Counted from the stretch's first letter, positions 1 through 55,519 are shown. The stretch is DNA of 64,000 nucleotides from Podarcis pityusensis (GCA_964106645.2 OZ067046.1), one strand, 5' to 3'. Translations and numbers: made by a program. Notes: generated by a model not told the origin, from the letters alone.

Positions 1-2425
1 AATTATTCTGCAGTCCACTGATGGATCACAATCTACATCCTGTCCATCAAGCCATGTTTCTGTCCTAAAATCGTATCTCAAATCTCCAGCTCTTGTAATG
101 TCAGATGTTGAACAAAAGAGGATTAACACTATGATAAACTATTTGAATGTGAGGTGTTACTGTCATTGTGATGTACTATTAATTGCAGTTTCTCCAACAT
201 TTTAATATGTGCAGCTGTCAGTAGGGTATTTTGCTAGTATACAGTTGCAGCTAGCAATTGATGGACACTCTCCACCTAAATGTTTCATAATAAAAGAGAG
301 AATAGACTCTCTTACTACCACCCCCCCCACCATAAAATCTCTTCAATCCATGAATATATTGGATTTTAGTGGAGAACTATCACTTTACGTGTCATTGTTT
401 CTAATATTTTCTATCTATAGATGATTACTAGAGTGGTGCTAATTGAAAAAGCTTTAAAATTTGGCAAACAGAATTCATTTTCTCCCTCTCTATGTGTCCA
501 AAACATATGTCGACTAGCAGTTGAGCTCTTTCCATCCCCACTTCTCTTCTCCTCTTCTGAGCACCAAAAATATAGTTGATGAACTCTTTTAATGTTTACC
601 ATGTAATCAGTTGAAATCATCCTCAAACCCAGAGGTTCTCATATTATGGCCTACAGACCACTAGTGGTCGGCAAGCTCCATTTGTGTGGTCTACACAAAG
701 GTTATATTTCAGTAGAGATCGCCTGTACTTGGCCCTGCACCTGATTTTTCCTAATGACTGAGGTCAAGTCTCTTTTGACCAAGGACAGATGTCTCAAAAT
801 AGCAAGGCTCTGGCCTATGACCCATGATCTTCATTTTTTAAAAATGCTGTTTACTTATTTTTCCCTAAAAATTACCAGTTTAAAGGGGTTTTCTCAACCT
901 CAGACACCTCATTTCCACAATACTGCACTGATGGTGCTGAAGAGCTAAAAGGTTGTAGTAAGTAGTCTGCTGAGGCTTCCAGCAATCAAGTTGTCCCTAA
1001 TAATGATAAAATTGAGGACCATTGCTGTAACTGCATCACAGAGAAAATTATGAAACTATTTCCTCTCCTTGCTCACTTGCCCTTTGTCAGAAGAGCACAA
1101 AGAAGTGTGCACAGGCCTGCACACACCCTCCCATAGATCCAGATGCCCTACTTGTCCCCACAACCATACACACCAACTGGTCCAAGCAGGAGTAGCCTGT
1201 ATCATGGAAAGAGAAGAGTGGGCCTATGGGATCTATATATGGCTGGTGCCCATACTGGCTGGGTATTTTTCACTGAGACTTGGCTGAGAGCAAGCCTGGA
1301 AGAGAAAAAGAGAATAAAGAGCTCTGTCAAGCCTCCTGCTCAAGGGTCACTGAATCCTCTTCTCTGCAAGAGTGTTCCTCAGAGTGGCATCCTGACACTG
1401 TGTCACCCCAGCTGTGGCAGCAGGGTTGAAAGGAATGGCAGTTGGCTACCAGCTATCGCAATGAACTCTGTCTCTCTCTTGCTGTGTAGAGAGGGAGGGG
1501 GGAAGGCTAGTGTGAGGTAGATAAAACCCTAGAGAGCTGCTGCCTATCAGTACGGAAAATACCACGGTAGATAGACCAGTGGTCTGATGCTGTATAAGGT
1601 GCCTCCCTTTACCCCTAGAGTTGATTTCAATCATTCCAAGAATTATCTCAAAAGTTTTTTCTTTTCTTTTCAAATGAAGGTTTAATTTTGAGTTTTAATA
1701 ACAAAAACTACATTTTCAGTATTTACTGAAGCAATGGATATCTACCGATGCAATATACGTATGAATCCCAACTCTTCCCGTTCTTACAAAAAGGACCTTT
1801 ATTTTGCCAGAAGGAAACTTCAATCAATATTTAATTTTACAATATGATTCAGCCAATAAGGATATTCAAAATATATGGCTGTGTGTGTTTACAATGATTG
1901 TCTATGATGTGCAATAAGTAGCATCGGAATGCTGTATACTTTCGAAAGACATGTAATTATACATCAAATGCACTATGCAGTTGTATTTAAAATGTTTCTG
2001 CAAAGTTTCCATGTGAAGTGATGATTTTTTTCTTAATGCTTGCACAACCTGAGATTGCCCAGTTGGTGTTAATATTCACTAGTATTTAATAGTACCCCAA
2101 TCTGAGCTGCATTTTTATTTTTTTGACAGCACCACTCTGCTCTAAAAATAAGAATAGCCATGGTTTGGGGAATTCTGGCAATAACATTTGGACCGTTAGT
2201 CATAGGCTTACTAAAGGACAGTAGAGAGAACATAACTCTCATGGATCAAATTCACTTCATGAACTCAGTGATTCAGATCTGTCTTGATGTTTGACATTTA
2301 AGCTCTGGGCATGAACCTGATACAGTTTCACTTTTCAGATATGCTTTCTGCTCTTCTGATTCATGTTATAATGATTTCAGACATTTATGCTCAATGAAAT
2401 AATACCCTATGGCCAGGAGATGTCA

Positions 2426-2427
<2 letters not shown>

Positions 2428-2465
<38 letters not shown>

Positions 2466-2491
2466 ACACACACACACACACACACACACAC
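2428..2491. repeat. (GT)18(AC)14 compound microsatellite forming a perfect palindrome
   Basis: GT run 2428-2463 directly abutting AC run 2464-2491. Confidence 0.95.
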
Positions 2492-2551: not shown

Positions 2552-3364
2552 TTGGATTCCAAAGCATCATCCCCTCCTCTCAGGTACCGATCCTCTCCTT
2601 GTCCAGATTCTAATAAAGGGAATCTTCAGGCTGTCACCGATGAATGGTTGTCACTGACTCTTGCCGTCTCACCTTCAAGCACACCTTCCCCAACTCCTCC
2701 ACCTTTTCCCAAACTCTTTCTTTCTGATTTAGAGGAACTTGGCACTCTAGCTTTGACAGGTCCGCAGAGCGTGCTGGGGCATTCAGATAATATCACTCCT
2801 CAAGTAAAGCATGGCCATTTTGTTCCAATTACCTCACCAAAGACTTCCCACTCCTTCCCTGAATCTCCAACTTCACCTCAGCCATTTTCTTCATCTGCCT
2901 GTAAATCACCTCCTCCAGCAACCTGGTTTCATGACAGCGTGCGTAATAAGCCTGTTACCAATAGTGTAAATCTAAGTGAAATTAAATGTAGCAATTTCAG
3001 AGAGCTGAGAGGAAGCCCCACCACCAAGGAAAGGAAAAATTTCTCACAAACAACTCCGGAAGTTCAAGGAATAGCAGGCCCTGCTCTTGTTCTCTCCAAA
3101 GAAGACCCATTATTCAGAACCCTGACGGAGACTGATGAACCAGAAGAAGAAATCTGTGAAGAGCTGCTAGCGATAATCCAAGGGGGCCGGTCAAAATGTA
3201 AAGATTCAGGTTTCTACAGGCGTGCCCCTGATGTAACAGAACAACTGGCAAGGCTTCATATAGAGGAAGAGCTGAGCCAGGACAATTTAGAGTCACTCAT
3301 ATCAGTTAAGAGAGAACCTATGATACCTTGCGAAGGGGACAGTTCAGCAGATACTAAAAAAGAG
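2552..3364 (+). CDS. SORBS2: Putative large alternative SORBS2 exon (271 aa, Ser/Pro-rich, upstream of SH3-3)
   Basis: Stop-free 813 nt inside the longest ORF of the window; polypyrimidine tract plus aag acceptor at 2549-2551; GAG|gtattt donor; phase 0-0; LQAVTDEWLSLTL...TPPPFP resembles the ponsin insertion motif. Confidence 0.72.
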
Positions 3365-5346
3365 GTATTTAAACTTCTTAAGATAAACTCCTACAGTCTC
3401 ATCATGAATTCAAGTCTTAACTTTCTGTTGTGTGTGTTTCTGCCTGCATGTGCCTTTCTAGTATAAACTGCAATATTTTGAGAACAGTAGCATGCACATT
3501 AACACACAAGCCCTCTCTCCAGTTATTTTCTTTTGGAGATGGGAAAAAATGTCACATTGTAACTTGGTTTACCCTAACTGAATAAAGTCTCTCCTTCCTT
3601 CCTTCTGGGGCTAGCCGCCATTAGTTGTGGCTGTCATCAGGAATGAAAAACCATTGGTTCCTTTGATGGGCACTAAGTAGTTTGGCACAACTCCTGGTCA
3701 AACTAGAAGACATGTCAATGTGATCATACTTTCCTAGGAATTAAGGAGTGTAAAATCTGTCACCCCCATGCAATTTCCCCAATACAAATGCTCCACCACC
3801 AGACCACAGTGGCCAATTTGCCCCAGAAGGGGAGATGCTATTTGTAGCTATACCATCTCTTCTCCTATGGCAAACAGAAACTTCTGGCTTTTAATAGATA
3901 ATTAACACCTCTCCCTCTACACACGGCACTGATTCAAGTCGCACCACCACGGGATGCTATTTATTCACACACCTTTAACATGCCATCTAGTTTTGTCTCG
4001 AAAACTTTACAGTAAGTCATTCAGGAAATGCCCATTTATTTATAGGTCACTATCTTGTTCAGAAGTGACCAACATGTCCTCCGGATGTCATTGGACTAAA
4101 ATTCCTGACAGCCTCAGCAAGCATTGCCAGTAGTCAGGTAACAGTAATCCAACAGCATTTGGAAGGTACTGCATTGGCTACCCTGATCTAGTTAACTTGA
4201 ACAACTCCCCATAGGTTTCTGATATAAAGGAAGCATTACCCAGAATACCCATTAAAGTTAATGCTGCTTTATACTACCTACACATGGTGTGTATAACACT
4301 GAATTCCTTGAAATGTGAGCAAGCCACAAACAACTTCTGCTTACCCCACCACACGAAAGGTGAGGGTAGCCAGTTTACACAATCATTGCGCACAGAGCTT
4401 TGCTTGATAACAAAAAAAGAACCACCTAGCTTTAGAAACTGCCAACTGGCAGCGGTTGAGTCTGGCCCCAGCGCCATTCTAATTAGTCCCTGGTGGTTCT
4501 ACTGAATTTTAATCAAGTTATCATAAAATGTTTCCCACAGTTTTACTCATAAGAAAAGGGGGGAGGATTTTTGGCTTGTAAGATTGTCTTCCATCTAATG
4601 TTACATCTCTCTTAAGAATTTGTATGTAGCATCCCACCTGTGGAACCAGCCATTTATAATGGCCTGCCTAGTGTTTGTTTTCCAGCATCACCACTGTGCA
4701 CACACAGGCAGCAAAAACAGTGTGTCTGTTGTGGTCCCTGGTCACTTGCATTCCGCTTGAAGGGTTAGACTTGCTCCCAACGGTGTTAAAGCCTGAACCT
4801 GCATGGAGTGATCAGTTTGCATGACAAAACATGCTTCAGGCCCTTTTCTGAGAAGCAGAATGTGCCTTCGCCACCTGCAAGAATGCAAGCATTGGCTATC
4901 CTTGTCCAAGAGAGACAAGGGCTGCAATCCAGCAAACATTTTCCAGGCATACTTGTTAACTCTACATGCACAAGCCTTTTCTTTTCCTCCCTGACCTTCA
5001 CTGTACAGTAGACTGCTTTCTAAATGTGGGAGCATTTAAGAAGCAGCTTGCTGCACTGTGAGGTGCAGGAGCAGGGACCCACTATGCCAGGAGCAGGGAG
5101 CTGCTATTCAAGTAAGCAGATAGGAAACAGTCCTGCTGAGCACAGAGATTGATCCATGTATTTCCAATAATTGCATTGTCCTATATGTACTCAATTAACC
5201 CTACTGAACACAACAATGGGTCGGAAGGTTGGGGGTGTCTCATTTCCTTTCACTGGTGGTGGTGCAGTATTCCTCTCTCTGCTTTATTGCTCCCTTTGTA
5301 ATTGCTCTTCTGCTCAATTACTGTTGTCTTTCTTTAAATGTTTAAG

Positions 5347-5541
5347 CCAGCTTCACTTCCCTATGAGACGCAAGCACCTTCCACCTCTCCTTCTTGCCTT
5401 GCTTCCAGTCCTCCATTTCACTCAGCCAAAACATCTTTCTCTGAATGCGTTTCTACATCTTCCAAGCCTGCTGTCACCCACTCACCCCCTCTCCTTTCCA
5501 AACTGTCATACAGACAGGAGAAACATTCTCCAAAATTAAAG
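5347..5541 (+). CDS. SORBS2: Putative alternative SORBS2 exon (65 aa, PASLPYETQ...HSPKLK)
   Basis: Long pyrimidine-rich tract plus tttaag acceptor; AAG|gtaaca donor; 195 nt, phase 0-0, open and Ser/Pro-rich; TGCATG at 5574. Confidence 0.6.
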
Positions 5542-7550
5542 GTAACAACAATATCTGTTAGAATATGAAATGCTGCATGCTTTTTCAAATGCCTGACATT
5601 CAGGAAGCCTGGAGGTTAACCTAATAATTTAAAATCAGATTTGATGGTGACTAACATTTAATGACATAAGCATGCAGTCAGATCAAAACGTTGTAGCACC
5701 AAGTATTTAAATATACACCATTCACCAAATACTCCAACCTTCAATACACTGGTGCAACTGAGCAAAAGTTATGTCACTACTGAAATCAGTGCATCAGAAT
5801 CAGGACATGCCAAACAATAAATATATAAATCAGCAAAGGTAAAATTTTGGCACACAGAATGATTCATAGTCCTTACTTCCTACAATTTTTCTTGTCTAGA
5901 TTTTGATTCCTCCGTAATACTACTAAGACATTTGCTATACAAATTTTTATCAGTAAGGACTTCATCCAAAGCCCTTCATCCAATCTGCTAGAAAATCACT
6001 ATTGACTTTTATGGTGTGGACTTTTATCTACTCGGCTAGTATAAACATAAATAACTCATTAAAATCCTGAAGAAGCTACCTAGCATGCATATGTATTTCT
6101 TACTCTTATAGCAAGCATATTCATTCCTATTCTTGAGAGCCAAATTACACTTGCCTGCCTGGCTTCCCAGTCAGTTCTAGGAGTACACAAAGCCAGGCTA
6201 GAATTGAGACACCAGCATAGCTGGGATCCCCATACACATGACAACTTACTAACTAGGGAGAACCATGGTCTTGGAAGTCCCGATGGAAATGGACAAGTGG
6301 AAGAGGCTATCACAGGCCTCAGGTACCTTGCCATTCCTACCAGCAAACAGATAATTAGACGACTCTCTTTTTGATAACACACCTAGTCTCATAGGAAGGG
6401 ACTCAGGAGGCCCAGGGCTTCTTGCCAGGTTGGTGTTGTGTCTCATCGTAAAGTACCTGGTTAGACTCTGCCTAGGTTGATACCACTTCCATATTGCTCA
6501 ATTATAAAGCATGCATAGCAACCCTTCTGAACTCACATACAGACATTTTAGATCAAAAGCATACCACACATCTGGAATCATGTGAGGGGAAGGTGTAGCC
6601 AATCTGAACTGAAATCTCATTATTCCCTTTCATTGAATTATGCTATTCCTACCAACACTGGTCAGCCACTCACAGTGGCACGGTCTATTCACAGCTATCC
6701 AATCCACCATTGCAGGAATTCCTGCAAGAGAATATTATTCATGCACTGCTTATGGTGCTACGAATCCAGTTAGCATTTTAGCCTGTTCTATCATTAGCAG
6801 GTACTACAACTGAAACAAGAACTAGTGTAATGGCACTGAGAAATAATAAATCATTGCTTTTTGACTCAAAAAAAAAAATCACTTTGTAAGAGTGCTTTTG
6901 AATTTTGCAGAAGGAATGTGTGACCCACACTGTCTGCTTCAACACTTATTGGAATGTGCAAAGGCACTCTTAGAATCCTGTAATTGTTGTTGTTTTTTTC
7001 ACACCCATCTTCTCAGTCAAGCTTTGGAATCTAATTTAAGGAGGCATCAGCTTCATCTCCCTTTCATATATCACTTCCTCTCTACTTACATTCACTCATG
7101 CAAAAGACACATTGAGATGCTTAGAATGCAGGTCAGATTTTCGCAATGAGCTCCTTTTAATCTCTCGAGAGTTATAATGCCTCAGCTACTAATATTTTCC
7201 TCCTGGCTATGAGTGCTGTTTGCTTTTGAGGTTGCTCCATTATTAAACTTGAAAATGTACAGTGCTGCATTTTGTGATAGGATCTTCTGCCCCAGGTAGA
7301 CTGGTAGGCATTGCATTTTTTAAGTGCTTGAGGACAGGGGTGGGGTGGGGGGAGTGTCGCATTAAGGAAAATGATCATCATAGCTTTGCAACACAGTGGA
7401 TTAACAGATGTGCATGTCTTTTTGCACAAGGGCATTTTGGAGATTTGAAAGCTGGTTTGTGCAGCTTGCAAGTGAGAATGATATGACAACAGTAAAATTG
7501 CCCGTCGAGACTTTTAGGTGAATTGACCCCCATGTTTATGGTTTTTCCAG

Positions 7551-7658
7551 GCCGATTTAAAAAGAGAGATATTTGTCATCGGCAAACCTCCTCGTAGCCC
7601 TGTTATGACAAGGAGATCTTGCAGCTCGCCAGTCAGAGGGCACAGCTATTTACATAGG
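7551..7658 (+). CDS. SORBS2: Putative alternative SORBS2 exon (36 aa, ADLKREIFVIGKPPRSPVMTRRSCSSPVRGHSYLHR)
   Basis: gtttttccag acceptor; AGG|gtatgg donor; 108 nt, phase 0-0, open frame; in phase with the next exon at 9883. Confidence 0.68.
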
Positions 7659-9882
7659 GTATGGTACCATATGGCCCTGATATTGCCAGGTTTCCCCTAG
7701 CATAAGGAATTTGGTTTCTCATTGTGAAGTCTGGGGCTCACATGCTTAAGTAAATTCTCTTTAAAATGGAAAAAGCTTAAAATGGAAAATGGAAAAAATT
7801 CTCTTTAAAATGGAAAAAGCTTGAGTGATAAAAGTGTGGAGGCCACAGGAAGCTGTGCTTGATTTGGACTGTTCTGCTGGGGAATTGTAAATTGCAAGTA
7901 TGTGTGAAACAGCCCTAAAAAGAAGCAATTTCTCTAACCAATCTGTGTTTAACTCTCCCTTCCTTCTTAAGTAGTTCCTCTCATTTCTAAGTATCTTACT
8001 TATGAGACCATTTGCAAAGGCTAAATAAGAAGACCGCATTCGTAATGTCTATGTTGCTGTTCCTTGTCGTTTCCAAATGCATGATCGCACACACACACCA
8101 AAATATTTTGCTGCTATGGCAACATATGTTGCACTCACTTGACGCCATGCTTTTTCATCACACTGATTCTCTGAGCTGCCATCTGCATCAGCTTTTTCTT
8201 GCTTATTCACATTAAGCTGCATCCTCTATACAGTTCAATCTCTTATTATAATTGTCCATACTCTGTCTTTGAAAGTAATGTGTGTGATTTCTGCATTTTA
8301 TGTACAAACCAAATGTTATACATATTTGAATCTAATCGTTTTTGTATACATTACAAACTTCATTTATCTGAACTACAAGAGGAGTCAGGGATGATCATGT
8401 TTGCATTAAGATGTTTATGTTTGAAAAAATGTAAGTGTTCTTATAGTGTTACAATCATGTACAGTTCCACGGAAAAACTATTGGATGCTTATTTATGAGG
8501 CTTAATTATTTATGAGGCTTGTAAAAGGCAAGGGCCTTTTACCAAGAAAGCTATATTCCTTTCTCATCAACCATTTGTTGACCATATGATCCCGAGACTT
8601 GATTACTTTACTGTACTCTTGATAGACCCATCTTGAAGACTAGTTAGCGTCTATAATTGGTACAAATAGTCCAGTCCTGCAAGTCCAAGGACTACCTTTC
8701 TCTCGCATTTAAGATGGAATTGGGTTATACTGATCTGAAAAAGCTCAGACTACATTGTTCACTTCATGTCCATCATTTGTGGTCCATTCATAAAATCAGG
8801 ATCCACATAAAATCAAACTATGAGACGGTTACATAAATATACCCTAATAGCTGTTCTTTTGAACTGTGAACTTCAAGTCATGAATCCTAAACCATGGATT
8901 TCCTTTTATATTTTGAAAACTTCCATATTTATTTTGTTACACTAAGTCTGCTGGGTATTTATGTATGTTTACTTACCTTTCTGTTCAATAAAGGCAGTTT
9001 CTTTTATGTTAAAAATATTCAGTTTGTTTTTCAGAACTTTAATTAATGCAAATCTGTGGTGGGAAATGAAAATTGCTTTTCAGCTTTTTTTACTGGCATT
9101 GGTTACCATTTTCCCCTTAAAAGGCTACATGTTGATAATTTATCTGCATTCTTTTAATAATTTGTTTTTCTCTTTTCTCATTCCCTATGGGATAGTTTAT
9201 TTTTGTTTTTTTAAAAAAACCTTCCACAGTCCTCTCAGAACTAGGCAGTATCATTAACAAACATAGCATGTGGTAGTTGCCAAATAGATATCTGAGAGTA
9301 CTTTTGCAAGAATGTGGTATTGAGCAATCATAAGGAATGGCTGCTTGTTCGGTCAGTGTTATTCACACTGATTTGCTTTCTGCTTGTCTGAGGCTGCTTG
9401 TTTGGTTTAAAAATGTATATTCATTTGTGCATTTTATAGACTAGCAGTATATATGACACTTAACAGCTTTCTTTGGCATGGTGATATTTATGCTGATGAT
9501 AATTAAGGTTGCAAAAGGTGTTAAAGAAATCCTAGCATCTCCTCTTTTCTTTTACGCTTTGGGGGTTGGTTTCCTTTGCTTTTAGTTGTTTAATTTATTT
9601 CTGAAGCAGACAGCCAGTAAATGAGGCCTGCATCACAAATATCCTACTTGGCTCTATGTGCTTCTGCATTGTGACCTTTAGCTATTTGTTAAACTGTTTT
9701 TATATGCAGCCTCAGGACCAGTAATATGGGGAGGATTGTTGTTGTTGTTGTTGTTGTTGTTGAGCACTTGGTGAGCTGTGCATGGTGGTCCTAGGGGTGC
9801 AAATTATATAGGACTGTGGAAAGCTATACCTGGATTTGTAACCATTTATACTCTTATTACATTTCAACTCATTTCATTTCAG

Positions 9883-9932
9883 CCACAGCGCCCTGTGTTT
9901 GCTCATGAAAATATACACAGTGGGGGGGAACC
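9883..9932 (+). CDS. SORBS2: SORBS2 exon (PQRPVFAHENIHSGGEP, linker before SH3-3)
   Basis: tttcag acceptor, CC|gtaagt donor; matches remembered human PQRPVFTHENIQGGGEP. Confidence 0.93.
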
Positions 9933-11189
9933 GTAAGTATTTTAATCTACTAAAGTTTTTATCTAAATGACATTGGTAAATTTCTAGTGTGGTTGAGTAG
10001 GGAGTATTTGCCATCCCAGAAGCTGTCTACTGAGGCAGCTTGCATCCCATGGCACAGCAGTGCATGGACAACATATGTGTAATGATATGGGCGGTGTTGG
10101 CTGTCCCTTCAAAACATGCTATCTGCCTCTGACTCTCACCATTGACTCATACATAGACCCATGACCCATACTGCCATTCATTAAACGCTCCTAAAACTCA
10201 AGAGCTCCTGTTCATGCACAAGAGGCATAACATCAGCAGCATCCCTTTCAAAGTGAGTTGAAGTTGGGTTGTGCACTTTGGTCATGAACATATTAGAGAG
10301 TTTTTTCAAAACTATATGTCGAGGAACAACTCTATCTTGTTATCTTCAGTCAAAGTGATATTGGGTATTAGGCAGAAGTGGGGAGATGCACGCTGAGCAT
10401 CGCTGCTGGTTAGAGGCAAAGGGATGAAGTACAGGCTGCTCAGTGCAGTGTGAGCACAATGGCAAAGCCAATCTGCCACTGCATCTACACCACAGTGAGC
10501 TTCCCCTGCCCCTCCCCATCTCAATAACCAGCAGCAACACCTGGCACTGGGAAGCTAGGTGAGCAATGCACCACCTCACTGGTACTGTTAGCAGGGCTGG
10601 AAAAACTCTCTGAATGAGACCTTGGAAAGCTGCTCTGCCAGTCAGGAGAAACTGTACTGGCTAGATGGACCATTGGTCCAGCTAAGTAGAAGGCAACTTC
10701 ATTTTTTGTGAAAATCTAGACAGACTTCATTTGCACATAACAATGCCAGTGGAAGTTGTGCAAGTTGTGTAGCTGGTGTATTGCATCATTTTATTCAGTT
10801 GCCGAAAGCTTTCCTTTTATAGCTCCTTTGGAGTGTTAAAATCTGAACATGTATCACCATTACTGAAAACAACTTAACTGTTGTAGTTGAAATTCAAGCA
10901 CACACAAGTAAATGTCATGCTAATTAAGTTGTTACACTGAATATTCTGGCACCTCTTAGTGGTGACAGGCAACTTACAAATTACTGATCAAATTCACTTT
11001 TGGCACTTAATGCAATTTTAATCTCAGAAATGAGTTCTATTTCCAATTATGATGGGAAGTGAATTAGCTTATGAGATTTATACATAAATACCTCCTTTGT
11101 TGATGTGTTGGACATAGTACTTAAAGTAGGAAAAAGTCAAGAGTTAGCCTGCAAATGGTGTAGAGAGGGGGAGCTTTTGTATACCAACT

Positions 11190-14072: not shown

Positions 14073-14179
14073 GTTTCAGGTTCTGTATAACTATACTCCT
14101 AGGAACGAAGATGAATTGGAGCTCAGAGAGGGAGATGTCATTGATGTGATGGAAAAATGTGATGATGGATGGTTTGTGG
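14073..14179 (+). CDS. SORBS2: SORBS2 exon, first part of third SH3 domain ([36 protein letters not shown])
   Basis: SH3 motifs; tttaag acceptor, G|gtatgt donor; phases 2-1 fit neighbouring exons. Confidence 0.96.
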
Positions 14180-15394: not shown

Positions 15395-15456
15395 GAACCT
15401 CCAGAAGAACAAAATTCTTTGGTACTTTCCCTGGAAACTATGTCAAGAGGCTGTGA
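15395..15456 (+). CDS. SORBS2: SORBS2 last coding exon ([19 protein letters not shown])
   Basis: tttcag acceptor; C-terminus matches ArgBP2 (KFFG...VKRL) rather than SORBS1 (KQFG...VKPLYL); TGA 15454-15456. Confidence 0.97.
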
Positions 15457-28610: not shown

Positions 28611-28957
28611 AAAAGGTAAAGGTAAAGGGACCCCTGACCATTAGGTCCAGTCACGGATTACTCTGGGGTTGCGGTGCTCATCTCGCTTTATTGGCCGAGG
28701 GAGCCAGCGTACAGCTTCCGGATCATGTGGCCAGCATGACTAAGCTGCTTCTGGTGAACCAGAGCAGTGCATGGAAACGCCATTTACCTTCCCGCTGGAG
28801 CAGTACCTATTTATCTACTTGCACTTGGACATGCTTTCGAACTGCTACGTGGGCAGGAGCTGGAACTGAGCAACGGGAGCTCACCCCGTGGCAGGAATTC
28901 ATACCCTGACATTCTGATCGGCAAGCCCAAGCCTCTGTGGTTTAGACCACCGCGCCA
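28611..28957 (-). mobile_element. Sauria SINE (Squam1-type)
   Basis: (aaaggt)n is the reverse complement of the (ACCTTT)n tail; body gccatttaccttcccg...gtacctatttatctact shared with 45159-45518. Confidence 0.9.
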
Positions 28958-31580: not shown

Positions 31581-31673
31581 ATGCCACAGAACGTTGTCCT
31601 CCCAGGACCGGCGCCTTGGGGCTTCAGGCTGACAGGAGGGATAGACTTTAAGCAGCCGTTAATCATATCCAGG
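31581..31673 (+). CDS. PDLIM3: PDLIM3 exon 1 ([31 protein letters not shown]; PDZ start)
   Basis: ATG in aaaATGc; PWGFRL PDZ motif of ALP/Enigma family; AGG|gtatgt donor; 93 nt. Confidence 0.96.
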
Positions 31674-45158: not shown

Positions 45159-45518
45159 AGGTGAAGGTACCCCTGCCCGTACAGGCCAGTTGTGTCCGAC
45201 TCTAGGGTTGTGCGCCCATCTCACTTAAGAGGCCGGGGGCCAGCGCTGTCTGGAGACACTTCCGGGTCACGTGGCCAGCGTGATGAAGCTGCTCTGGCGA
45301 GCCAGCACCAGCGCAGCACACAGAAACGCCGTTTACCTTCCCGCTATAAAGCGGTACCTATTTATCTACTTGCACTTAGGGGTGCTTTCGAACTACTAGG
45401 TGGGCAGGAGCTGGGACCGAAAGATGGGAGCTCACCCCGCCGTGGGGATTCGAACCGACCATACGATCGGCAGGTCCTAGGCACTGAGGTTTTACCAACA
45501 GCGCCACCCGCGTCCCTC
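45159..45518 (-). mobile_element. Apparently full-length Sauria SINE with 14-bp TSD
   Basis: TATGTAATATCTAA at 45145-45158 and 45519-45532; minus-strand B-box-like ggttcgaatcc; CpG-rich. Confidence 0.92.
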
Positions 45519-45787
45519 TATGTAATATCTAATTACGGCCATATTTAAGCTACACAGCCAAATTTACAGTTTCTTCTACAAAAATTAGCAATGACATGTT
45601 ATTGTCTATAAGTATATATCCTCCCTATACTCCTCCATATATTTTCTATGGTGAAACACAGGATGCTTGCTTAGTAGTTTGCAGCAAGATGCGTTTCATT
45701 AATAAGTAGCAGCATTGCCAATTGTGCTTGTTATTGGCTTTAATGTGCATTGTAGCTTTGTGTATTTTGTCTGCCTGTTGTGCACAG

Positions 45788-45975
45788 GAATTCAAGCCCA
45801 TTGGTACAGCTCACAACAGAAGGGCCCAGCCTTTTGTTGCAGCAGCAAACCTCGATAACAAAAGACAGGTGGTGAGCTCTGCCTATAACTCTCCCATTGG
45901 GCTGTATTCATCTGGCAATATACATGATGCTCTTCATGGACAGCTACGGGGCCTTATCCCCAATTCACCTGCAAA
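45788..45975 (+). CDS. PDLIM3: PDLIM3 alternative exon 4 ([16 protein letters not shown]...YNSPIGLYS; ZM motif, 316-aa cardiac/smooth-type isoform)
   Basis: gcacag/gtaagt; 188 nt, phase 0-2; spliced CDS 951 nt. Confidence 0.95.
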
Positions 45976-55329: not shown

Positions 55330-55519
55330 TGGCACAGTGGTGAAGGCACGTGATAAGTACAGGCATCCTGAATGTTTCGTGTGCTCTGACTGCAACCTCA
55401 ACCTGAAGCAGAAAGGCTACTTCTTTGTGGAGGGGCAATTATACTGTGAAGCTCATGCACGAGCTCGTATGAGGCCCCCAGAGGGATATGAAGCCGTCAC
55501 TGTTTATCCCAAGGCTTAG
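55330..55519 (+). CDS. PDLIM3: PDLIM3 exon 9 (LIM domain, ...[10 protein letters not shown]...YCEAH...VYPKA*)
   Basis: ctacag acceptor; LIM Cys/His pattern; TAG 55517-55519. Confidence 0.97.

What the first reader, a model, noticed from the sequence alone, without database searches (positions are those of the whole stretch)
2552..7658. Hidden three-exon, 372-aa cassette before the third SH3 of SORBS2: a possible counterpart of the ponsin muscle insertion
Seen: three open, phase 0-0 exons with proper splice sites (813, 195 and 108 nt) lie upstream of the phase-0 PQRPVF exon, so any subset can be spliced in frame. Known: the paralog SORBS1/ponsin has a striated-muscle-specific insertion of roughly 270-280 aa between SH3-2 and SH3-3, while human ArgBP2, as I recall it, runs directly ...SSNK|PQRPVF. 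Inference: the insertion predates the SORBS1/SORBS2 duplication and survives in lizard SORBS2, giving a modular spacer/scaffold isoform set that mammals may have lost. It may already exist in automated gene models without functional description.
Basis: partly seen in the sequence, partly recalled or inferred. Interest (0 to 1): 0.8.

Follow-up and report, generated by a model that had tools for sequence, protein, structure and literature searches.

The report
Ancient optional spacer exons in SORBS2
A lizard's SORBS2 gene, which encodes a muscle and cell-adhesion adaptor, has three real optional exons that insert a long flexible spacer before its last binding domain; they are kept from sharks to bats and already appear in automated gene models, but I found no study of them.

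Summary
Observation confirmed. Three open, phase 0-0, AG/GT exons (813, 195, 108 nt) lie between SH3-2 and SH3-3 of SORBS2 in a lacertid lizard (95-100% identical to Podarcis and Lacerta models). They are not hidden: predicted RefSeq/Ensembl SORBS2 isoforms carry them (A, A+B, A+C, A+B+C) in squamates, turtles, birds, frogs, coelacanth, ray-finned fish and shark. Loss in mammals as a class is refuted: all three exons are open, with splice sites, in dunnart, anteater and bat; human and mouse were not examined. dN/dS is 0.4-0.6. One RNA-like run gives indirect evidence of an exon A to PQRPVF junction; a run with high SORBS2 skips the cassette; B and C junctions were not seen. A TGCATG motif follows exon B in all six amniotes compared. 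The insert is predicted disordered, with short conserved motifs. Most likely it is a tissue-regulated spacer that uncouples SH3-2 from SH3-3 and adds docking and phosphorylation sites. Homology to the ponsin insertion is plausible but untested, since no SORBS1 sequence could be obtained. A fourth, 39-nt candidate exon (1720-1758) is absent from all models fetched. The scan had not found this on other DNA.

The parts
2552..3364 (+). Cassette exon A, 271 aa, phase 0-0, mostly disordered, two conserved motifs
   Evidence: indirect A-to-D junction
2621..2707 (+). Motif 1 of exon A: predicted short helix with the conserved W-L-S-L-T core, followed by a P-T-P-P-P-F-P proline stretch. This is the part recalled as similar to the SORBS1 insertion
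   Evidence: the SORBS1 likeness is from memory and was not tested
3143..3271 (+). Motif 2 of exon A: acidic predicted helix (I-C-E-E-L-L) and an L-x-I-E-E element, invariant C, L, I, E, E from shark to mammals
5347..5541 (+). Cassette exon B, 65 aa, 40% Ser+Pro, phase 0-0
5574..5579 (+). TGCATG (RBFOX-type element) 33 nt after exon B; found at +27 to +35 in all six amniotes, with a second GCATG at 5670 (+110 to +144 in all six)
3445..3450 (+). TGCATG 81 nt after exon A; GCATG aligned in snake, absent in turtle and mammals
7551..7658 (+). Cassette exon C, 36 aa, basic, most conserved part (K-P-P-R-S-P invariant in 28 aligned proteins; a P-x-S-P kinase-type site)
9883..9932 (+). Constitutive PQRPVF exon (D), phase 0 to 2
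14073..14179 (+). First exon of SH3-3
15395..15456 (+). Last coding exon of SORBS2 with stop codon
1720..1758 (+). Candidate fourth exon: 39 nt, AG/GT, phase 0-0, 13 codons, conserved in snake and turtle; micro-exon or alternative last exon; in no fetched model

Best explanation
A, B and C are genuine alternatively spliced coding exons of SORBS2 (ArgBP2), at least as old as jawed vertebrates and kept in reptiles, birds, amphibians, fish and the mammals examined (about 0.95). They are skipped in at least one sample with high SORBS2 and included in some others. How it most likely works (inferred, about 0.55): a tissue-restricted splicing programme, probably RBFOX acting through the conserved elements after exon B in striated muscle and/or neurons, includes A with or without B and C. 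This lengthens the SH3-2 to SH3-3 linker from about 45 to 315-417 residues. The two SH3 domains can then no longer grip one ligand together, SH3-3 reaches further, and the disordered insert adds short docking motifs (a Trp helix plus proline stretch, an acidic helix, the K-P-P-R-S-P element) and many Ser/Thr-Pro sites for proline-directed kinases. Shown: exon structure, conservation, purifying selection, presence in models, predicted disorder. Inferred: regulator, tissue, partners, effect on binding.
For: Open frames and splice sites in six amniotes. dN/dS over A+B+C: 0.49 (CI 0.37-0.66) lizard-snake; 0.38 (0.29-0.51) lizard-turtle and 0.62 (0.45-0.82) anteater-bat. SORBS2 models with the cassette in rattlesnake, Pogona, coelacanth, teleosts, bamboo shark, frogs, birds, turtles and marsupials. 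Combinations among fetched full-length models ending in SH3-3: A+B+C 102, A+B 28, A+C 25, A alone 20. In run X5 the mixed loose end before 9881 matches 29 of 30 letters of the letterwise minimum of exon A's 3' end and the turtle upstream exon, the best of about 128,000 positions in the window. TGCATG after B in 6 of 6 species against a 6-13% background per 250 nt; downstream RBFOX motifs are held to promote inclusion (PMC11216089). AlphaFold2: three confident SH3 domains, insert at pLDDT under 50 apart from short helices. In the paralogue ponsin, l-afadin binding needs SH3-2 and SH3-3 together and falls when they are separated (PMC2148189).
Against: No junction involving B or C was seen in four runs. 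Run X1 has exon D at depth about 1640 but only one unbroken unspliced contig of depth 29 across the cassette. The A-to-D junction is decoded from a two-contig consensus under an assumed tie rule, in a run whose RNA status is a guess. Gene models are automated and can propagate between species. The middle of exon A evolves near neutrality (dN/dS 0.95 lizard-snake). No peptide evidence: the motifs were absent from one mouse myotube phosphoproteome whose files were partly cut, and whose search database may lack them. Tissue labels were not available.
Confidence: 0.7

Rival explanations
1. The exons mainly serve as alternative last exons. Read-through of a donor meets a stop within 8-33 codons and gives SORBS2 forms that lack SH3-3, so the main effect is removal of SH3-3, not spacing.
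For: Eleven fetched models end just after A or C without SH3-3 (Pogona, Varanus, pigeon and others). Stops and AATAAA/ATTAAA lie shortly after each donor. X1 shows higher unspliced depth upstream of exon D (29) than downstream (11).
Against: Donor sites and phase 0 are conserved for all three exons in six amniotes, and the read-through tails differ between the species seen. About 180 models splice on to SH3-3. The X5 loose end points to A spliced to D.
Confidence: 0.12
2. A-B-C form a separate small nested gene or internal-promoter transcript, as NCBI annotates them in a snake, painted turtle, dunnart and anteater.
For: Stand-alone 'uncharacterized' models of 308-389 aa inside the SORBS2 intron in four genomes.
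Against: Their start methionines lie at different positions, while the phase-0 acceptor of A is conserved. Many other genomes splice the same exons into SORBS2. They look like orphaned pieces where linking reads were missing.
Confidence: 0.05
3. The cassette is a rarely used, decaying remnant; only length and frame matter, or it persists at a low level without a specific role.
For: Low or undetectable inclusion in X1; faster divergence in placentals (A about 34% identical lizard-bat; dN/dS 0.67, CI up to 1.0); frogs have lost the first half of A in two models.
Against: Open frames from shark to bat, invariant motif residues, dN/dS below 1 overall, conserved intronic elements.
Confidence: 0.13

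Closest known systems
SORBS2/ArgBP2 (sorbin and SH3 domain family), predicted long isoforms such as XP_053258430.1 (Podarcis raffonei X30), XP_039186646.1 (Crotalus tigris X18), XP_020657941.1 (Pogona X8)
   Same: Same gene, same exons, same position; 97-100% identity to the Podarcis model.
   Different: Nothing in structure. The literature I could read names alpha, beta, gamma, delta and neuronal variants and the neuronal zinc-finger exon (PMC13121097, PMC9333371) but the passages retrieved mention no insert before SH3-3. The 39-nt candidate exon is in none of the fetched models.
Muscle-specific insertion of ponsin/CAP (SORBS1) between SH3-2 and SH3-3 (Gehmlich et al. 2010, PMID 20129698; title seen in a reference list, text not held; details from memory: about 278 aa, binds Nck1/2, phosphorylated)
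   Same: Paralogous gene, same position, similar size to exon A, Ser/Pro-rich. From memory only, its first part has an E-W-I-S-L-T-V-G stretch followed by a proline run, and coelacanth and shark SORBS2 exon A carry that same stretch.
   Different: Here three exons and 372 aa, with acidic motif 2 and basic exon C for which I recall no ponsin equivalent. A profile of exon A returned no recognisable SORBS1 at E up to 0.001; the hits named SORBS1 that I checked are mislabelled SORBS2. Tissue and partners are unknown.
SORBS1 exon 25, MBNL-regulated muscle exon (PMC12624223)
   Same: Muscle-regulated in-frame cassette in the same family.
   Different: About 55 aa, helical and upstream of SH3-1; a different exon.

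Membership tests
SORBS2 gene | SH3 domains closer to SORBS2 than to SORBS1 or vinexin | tested here: met
SORBS2 gene | PDLIM3 as downstream neighbour (synteny known from other vertebrates; own knowledge) | tested here: met
Conserved alternative coding cassette exons | Canonical splice sites, frame-preserving length, no stops in orthologues | tested here: met
Conserved alternative coding cassette exons | Codon-level purifying selection | tested here: met
   weak in the middle of A and in placental A
Conserved alternative coding cassette exons | Both inclusion and skipping junctions seen in RNA | tested here: inconclusive
   skipping and an indirect A-to-D junction in X5; nothing for B or C
Ponsin-type muscle insertion | Position between SH3-2 and SH3-3, about 270-280 aa, Pro/Ser-rich and disordered | tested here: met
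   for SORBS2; ponsin's values are from memory
Ponsin-type muscle insertion | Sequence homology to the SORBS1 insertion | tested here: inconclusive
   no SORBS1 insertion retrieved; likeness recalled only
Ponsin-type muscle insertion | Striated-muscle-specific inclusion | not testable with these tools
   run tissues are not given; conserved RBFOX-type motifs are only suggestive
Ponsin-type muscle insertion | Binds Nck adaptors and is phosphorylated | not testable with these tools
   PxxP and S/T-P sites present; no binding data

The most novel reading that the evidence does not exclude
SORBS1 and SORBS2 inherited one muscle-regulated insertion from their common ancestor. SORBS2 kept it as a three- or four-exon module in all jawed-vertebrate classes, including placental mammals where it is mostly unannotated or split off as an 'uncharacterized' nested gene. 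It switches SH3-2/SH3-3 coupling in a cardiomyopathy-linked adaptor, and studies built on the short isoforms have missed it.
Probability: 0.4. Interest if true: 0.6.

Novelty: new variant of a known kind. Interest (0 to 1): 0.38.

Why it matters
SORBS2 is needed for heart structure in mice and is a candidate cardiomyopathy gene (PMC7660791, PMC9333371). A 270-370 residue conserved insert that I found described in no paper would change which partners its SH3 domains bind in the tissues that use it. If it is intact in mouse and human too, variants in it may be read as intronic. The work also explains four 'uncharacterized' nested genes as orphaned SORBS2 exons. The exons themselves are already in predicted isoforms of many species, so this is a neglected feature more than a discovery.

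Tried and rejected
Pfam: no family for A, B or C. PDB: no solved relative of the cassette. ESM Atlas: no usable hit for motif 1. A motif-1 word search built to pull out SORBS1 fragments gave 12 candidates and no hit. A full-text search for the motif found nothing. The two ponsin papers are not held. Ten paper searches turned up no description of this SORBS2 insert; subscription papers are not covered. The Engraulis protein named SORBS1 has an SH3-1 closer to SORBS2 and the coelacanth one clusters with SORBS2 isoforms, so both were rejected as evidence for SORBS1 homology. Runs X12 and X23 had almost no coverage. A lacertid locus for the upstream exon could not be fetched, so the turtle exon, which encodes the same ten terminal residues, stood in. 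Loss in mammals was considered and rejected. No human contig or human insertion sequence was fetched (human SH3 and PDZ chains appeared only as PDB hits), so the human and mouse state is open. The large protein search was used once because the claim rested on absence of relatives.

Full report
Observation. All are stop-free, phase 0-0 and bounded by AG and GT, and the PQRPVF exon (D) begins in phase 0 at 9883. The third SH3 domain and the stop codon follow at 14073-14179 and 15395-15456. The upstream constitutive exon is outside the window. The animal is a lacertid: a Podarcis raffonei RefSeq isoform matches A, B and C at 97, 100 and 100%, and Lacerta at 95, 97 and 94%. The gene is SORBS2 by SH3-1 similarity and by the PDLIM3 neighbour at 31581.

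Already in models. A word search with exon A found squamate fragments and a snake 'uncharacterized' 389-aa model that joins A, B and C as a nested gene inside the SORBS gene. A profile search of 1.84 billion representatives gave 30 hits, most of the named ones SORBS2 isoforms: rattlesnake (A+B+C), Pogona (A), coelacanth, several teleosts, bamboo shark and two frogs with a shortened A. A region search gave 497 proteins, with many squamates, turtles, birds, sturgeon, paddlefish, bilby and Tasmanian devil among the 120 listed. Among fetched full-length models ending in SH3-3, 102 have A+B+C, 28 A+B, 25 A+C and 20 A alone; none clearly has B or C without some part of A, but the searches were driven by A. 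These are automated predictions, not experimental isoforms.

Not lost in mammals. Genomic loci of dunnart, anteater and flying fox hold all three exons, open, in order between the SH3-2 exon and exon D where the locus reaches it, with matching splice sites. NCBI splits them off as separate uncharacterized genes in anteater, dunnart and painted turtle. Human and mouse were not examined. Presence in shark dates the cassette to the ancestor of jawed vertebrates or earlier.

Selection. Nei-Gojobori dN/dS for A, B, C is 0.61, 0.23, 0.26 against snake and 0.45, 0.25, 0.14 against turtle; anteater against bat gives 0.62 over all three, compared with 0.03 for the flanking constitutive exon. Constraint is real but patchy. 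It concentrates in motif 1 (A residues about 24-52), a short F-[IV]-P-I-T element, motif 2 (about 198-240), the end of B and most of C. The middle of A is near neutral. This is the pattern expected of a disordered linker with short motifs, and AlphaFold2 agrees: three confident SH3 domains, an insert under pLDDT 50, and short low-confidence helices at motifs 1 and 2.

RNA. No holder run is on record as RNA and tissues are not given. I laid four runs on 5200-10100. X1 behaves like RNA with high SORBS2: exon D at depth about 1640, against one 7448-nt unspliced contig of depth 29 that passes B and C and, by its length, A, with no branch. The cassette is therefore skipped or rare there, although contigs drop rare variants. 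X5 has two contigs that leave the sequence just before 9881, reported as one consensus with agreement 0.62. If ties go to the alphabetically first letter, the consensus should be the letterwise minimum of the two. Exon A's 3' end (3333-3362, followed by AG) breaks that rule at no position and ranks first in the window. The letters it forces on the second contig predicted D-R-I-[HQ]-[HQ]-L, which is how the Podarcis upstream exon ends. With the turtle upstream exon as stand-in, the minimum reproduces 29 of 30 letters, the single best of about 128,000 positions. So X5 most likely holds both the skipping junction and an A-to-D junction, the form annotated in Pogona and Lacerta. This is indirect and rests on an assumed tie rule. 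No B or C junction was seen.

Regulation. TGCATG lies 27-35 nt after exon B, with a second GCATG at 110-144 nt, in all six amniotes, against a background of 6-13% per 250 nt; related species are not independent, but the intron around is otherwise divergent. Downstream (U)GCAUG is held to promote inclusion by RBFOX proteins, which have brain and muscle forms (PMC11216089). This suggests muscle and/or neural inclusion but does not show it.

Mechanism. Without the cassette about 45 residues separate SH3-2 and SH3-3; with it, 315-417. [quoted passage not shown] By analogy, inclusion would uncouple the pair, free SH3-3 on a long tether, and add docking motifs and proline-directed kinase sites (13, 4 and 2 S/T-P sites in A, B, C). 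This step is inference. Rivals are use as alternative last exons that drop SH3-3 (11 models end that way), a nested gene, or a decaying remnant; each is weighed in the rival list.

Relation to ponsin. Position, size and composition fit the muscle insertion of SORBS1 as I recall it from Gehmlich et al. 2010 (not readable). No tool returned a SORBS1 insertion; a motif of about 30 residues could easily miss the threshold of so large a search. I put homology at about 0.7, untested, and do not file the cassette as a member of that class.

Extra finding. A conserved block at 1662-1971 contains a 39-nt AG/GT-flanked, phase 0-0 open stretch at 1720-1758, about 800 nt before A in both lizard and turtle. 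Against snake it differs by three synonymous changes only; against turtle by two synonymous codons and one I-to-V codon. It was not found in the three mammals and is in none of the 227 proteins fetched. It may be a fourth micro-exon or, since the donor reads Val-stop, a short last exon.

Verdict. Real, conserved and ancient, already present in predicted isoforms, retained in the mammals examined, and not described in any paper I could find. New variant of a known kind; interest 0.38. The window's exons were searched separately by reference and the joined step was left out; no human locus was examined.

Noticed in passing
window 1720-1758 (+): 39-nt candidate micro-exon or alternative last exon, 13 codons, conserved in snake and turtle with mostly synonymous changes, absent from fetched models and not found in three mammals.
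   Followed up: partly
window 1759-1971, 7968-8205, 9458-9496: Intronic blocks conserved with snake (71-85% identity); the last two contain aligned (T)GCATG motifs; possible splicing elements or a 3' UTR.
   Followed up: partly
window 31581-55500 (+): PDLIM3: PDZ exon at 31581, a middle motif near 45884 and a LIM-type exon near 55364.
   Followed up: partly
L001 10001-16013, L003 10001-16607, L005 10001-12897, L006 10001-12200: NCBI 'uncharacterized' nested genes in a snake, anteater, painted turtle and dunnart are orphaned SORBS2 cassette exons.
   Followed up: yes
window 2427-2490: A TG repeat directly followed by a CA repeat, 60 nt before exon A's acceptor; self-complementary, so it could form a hairpin in the pre-mRNA near the branch point.
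   Followed up: no
window 28613-28900 and 45165-45545: Two copies of a similar repeat sharing translated words, probably a squamate SINE (recognised from memory).
   Followed up: no
window 7751-7822: Short direct duplication of about 44 nt; a contig of run X5 lacks one copy.
   Followed up: no
P0024, P0031 (frogs): Two frog models have a shorter exon A without motif 1 but with motif 2, while Spea keeps the full exon.
   Followed up: no
P0030, P0037, P0028: Database names SORBS1 or vinexin-like are attached to fish and coelacanth proteins that carry the SORBS2 cassette; P0030's SH3-1 is closer to SORBS2.
   Followed up: partly
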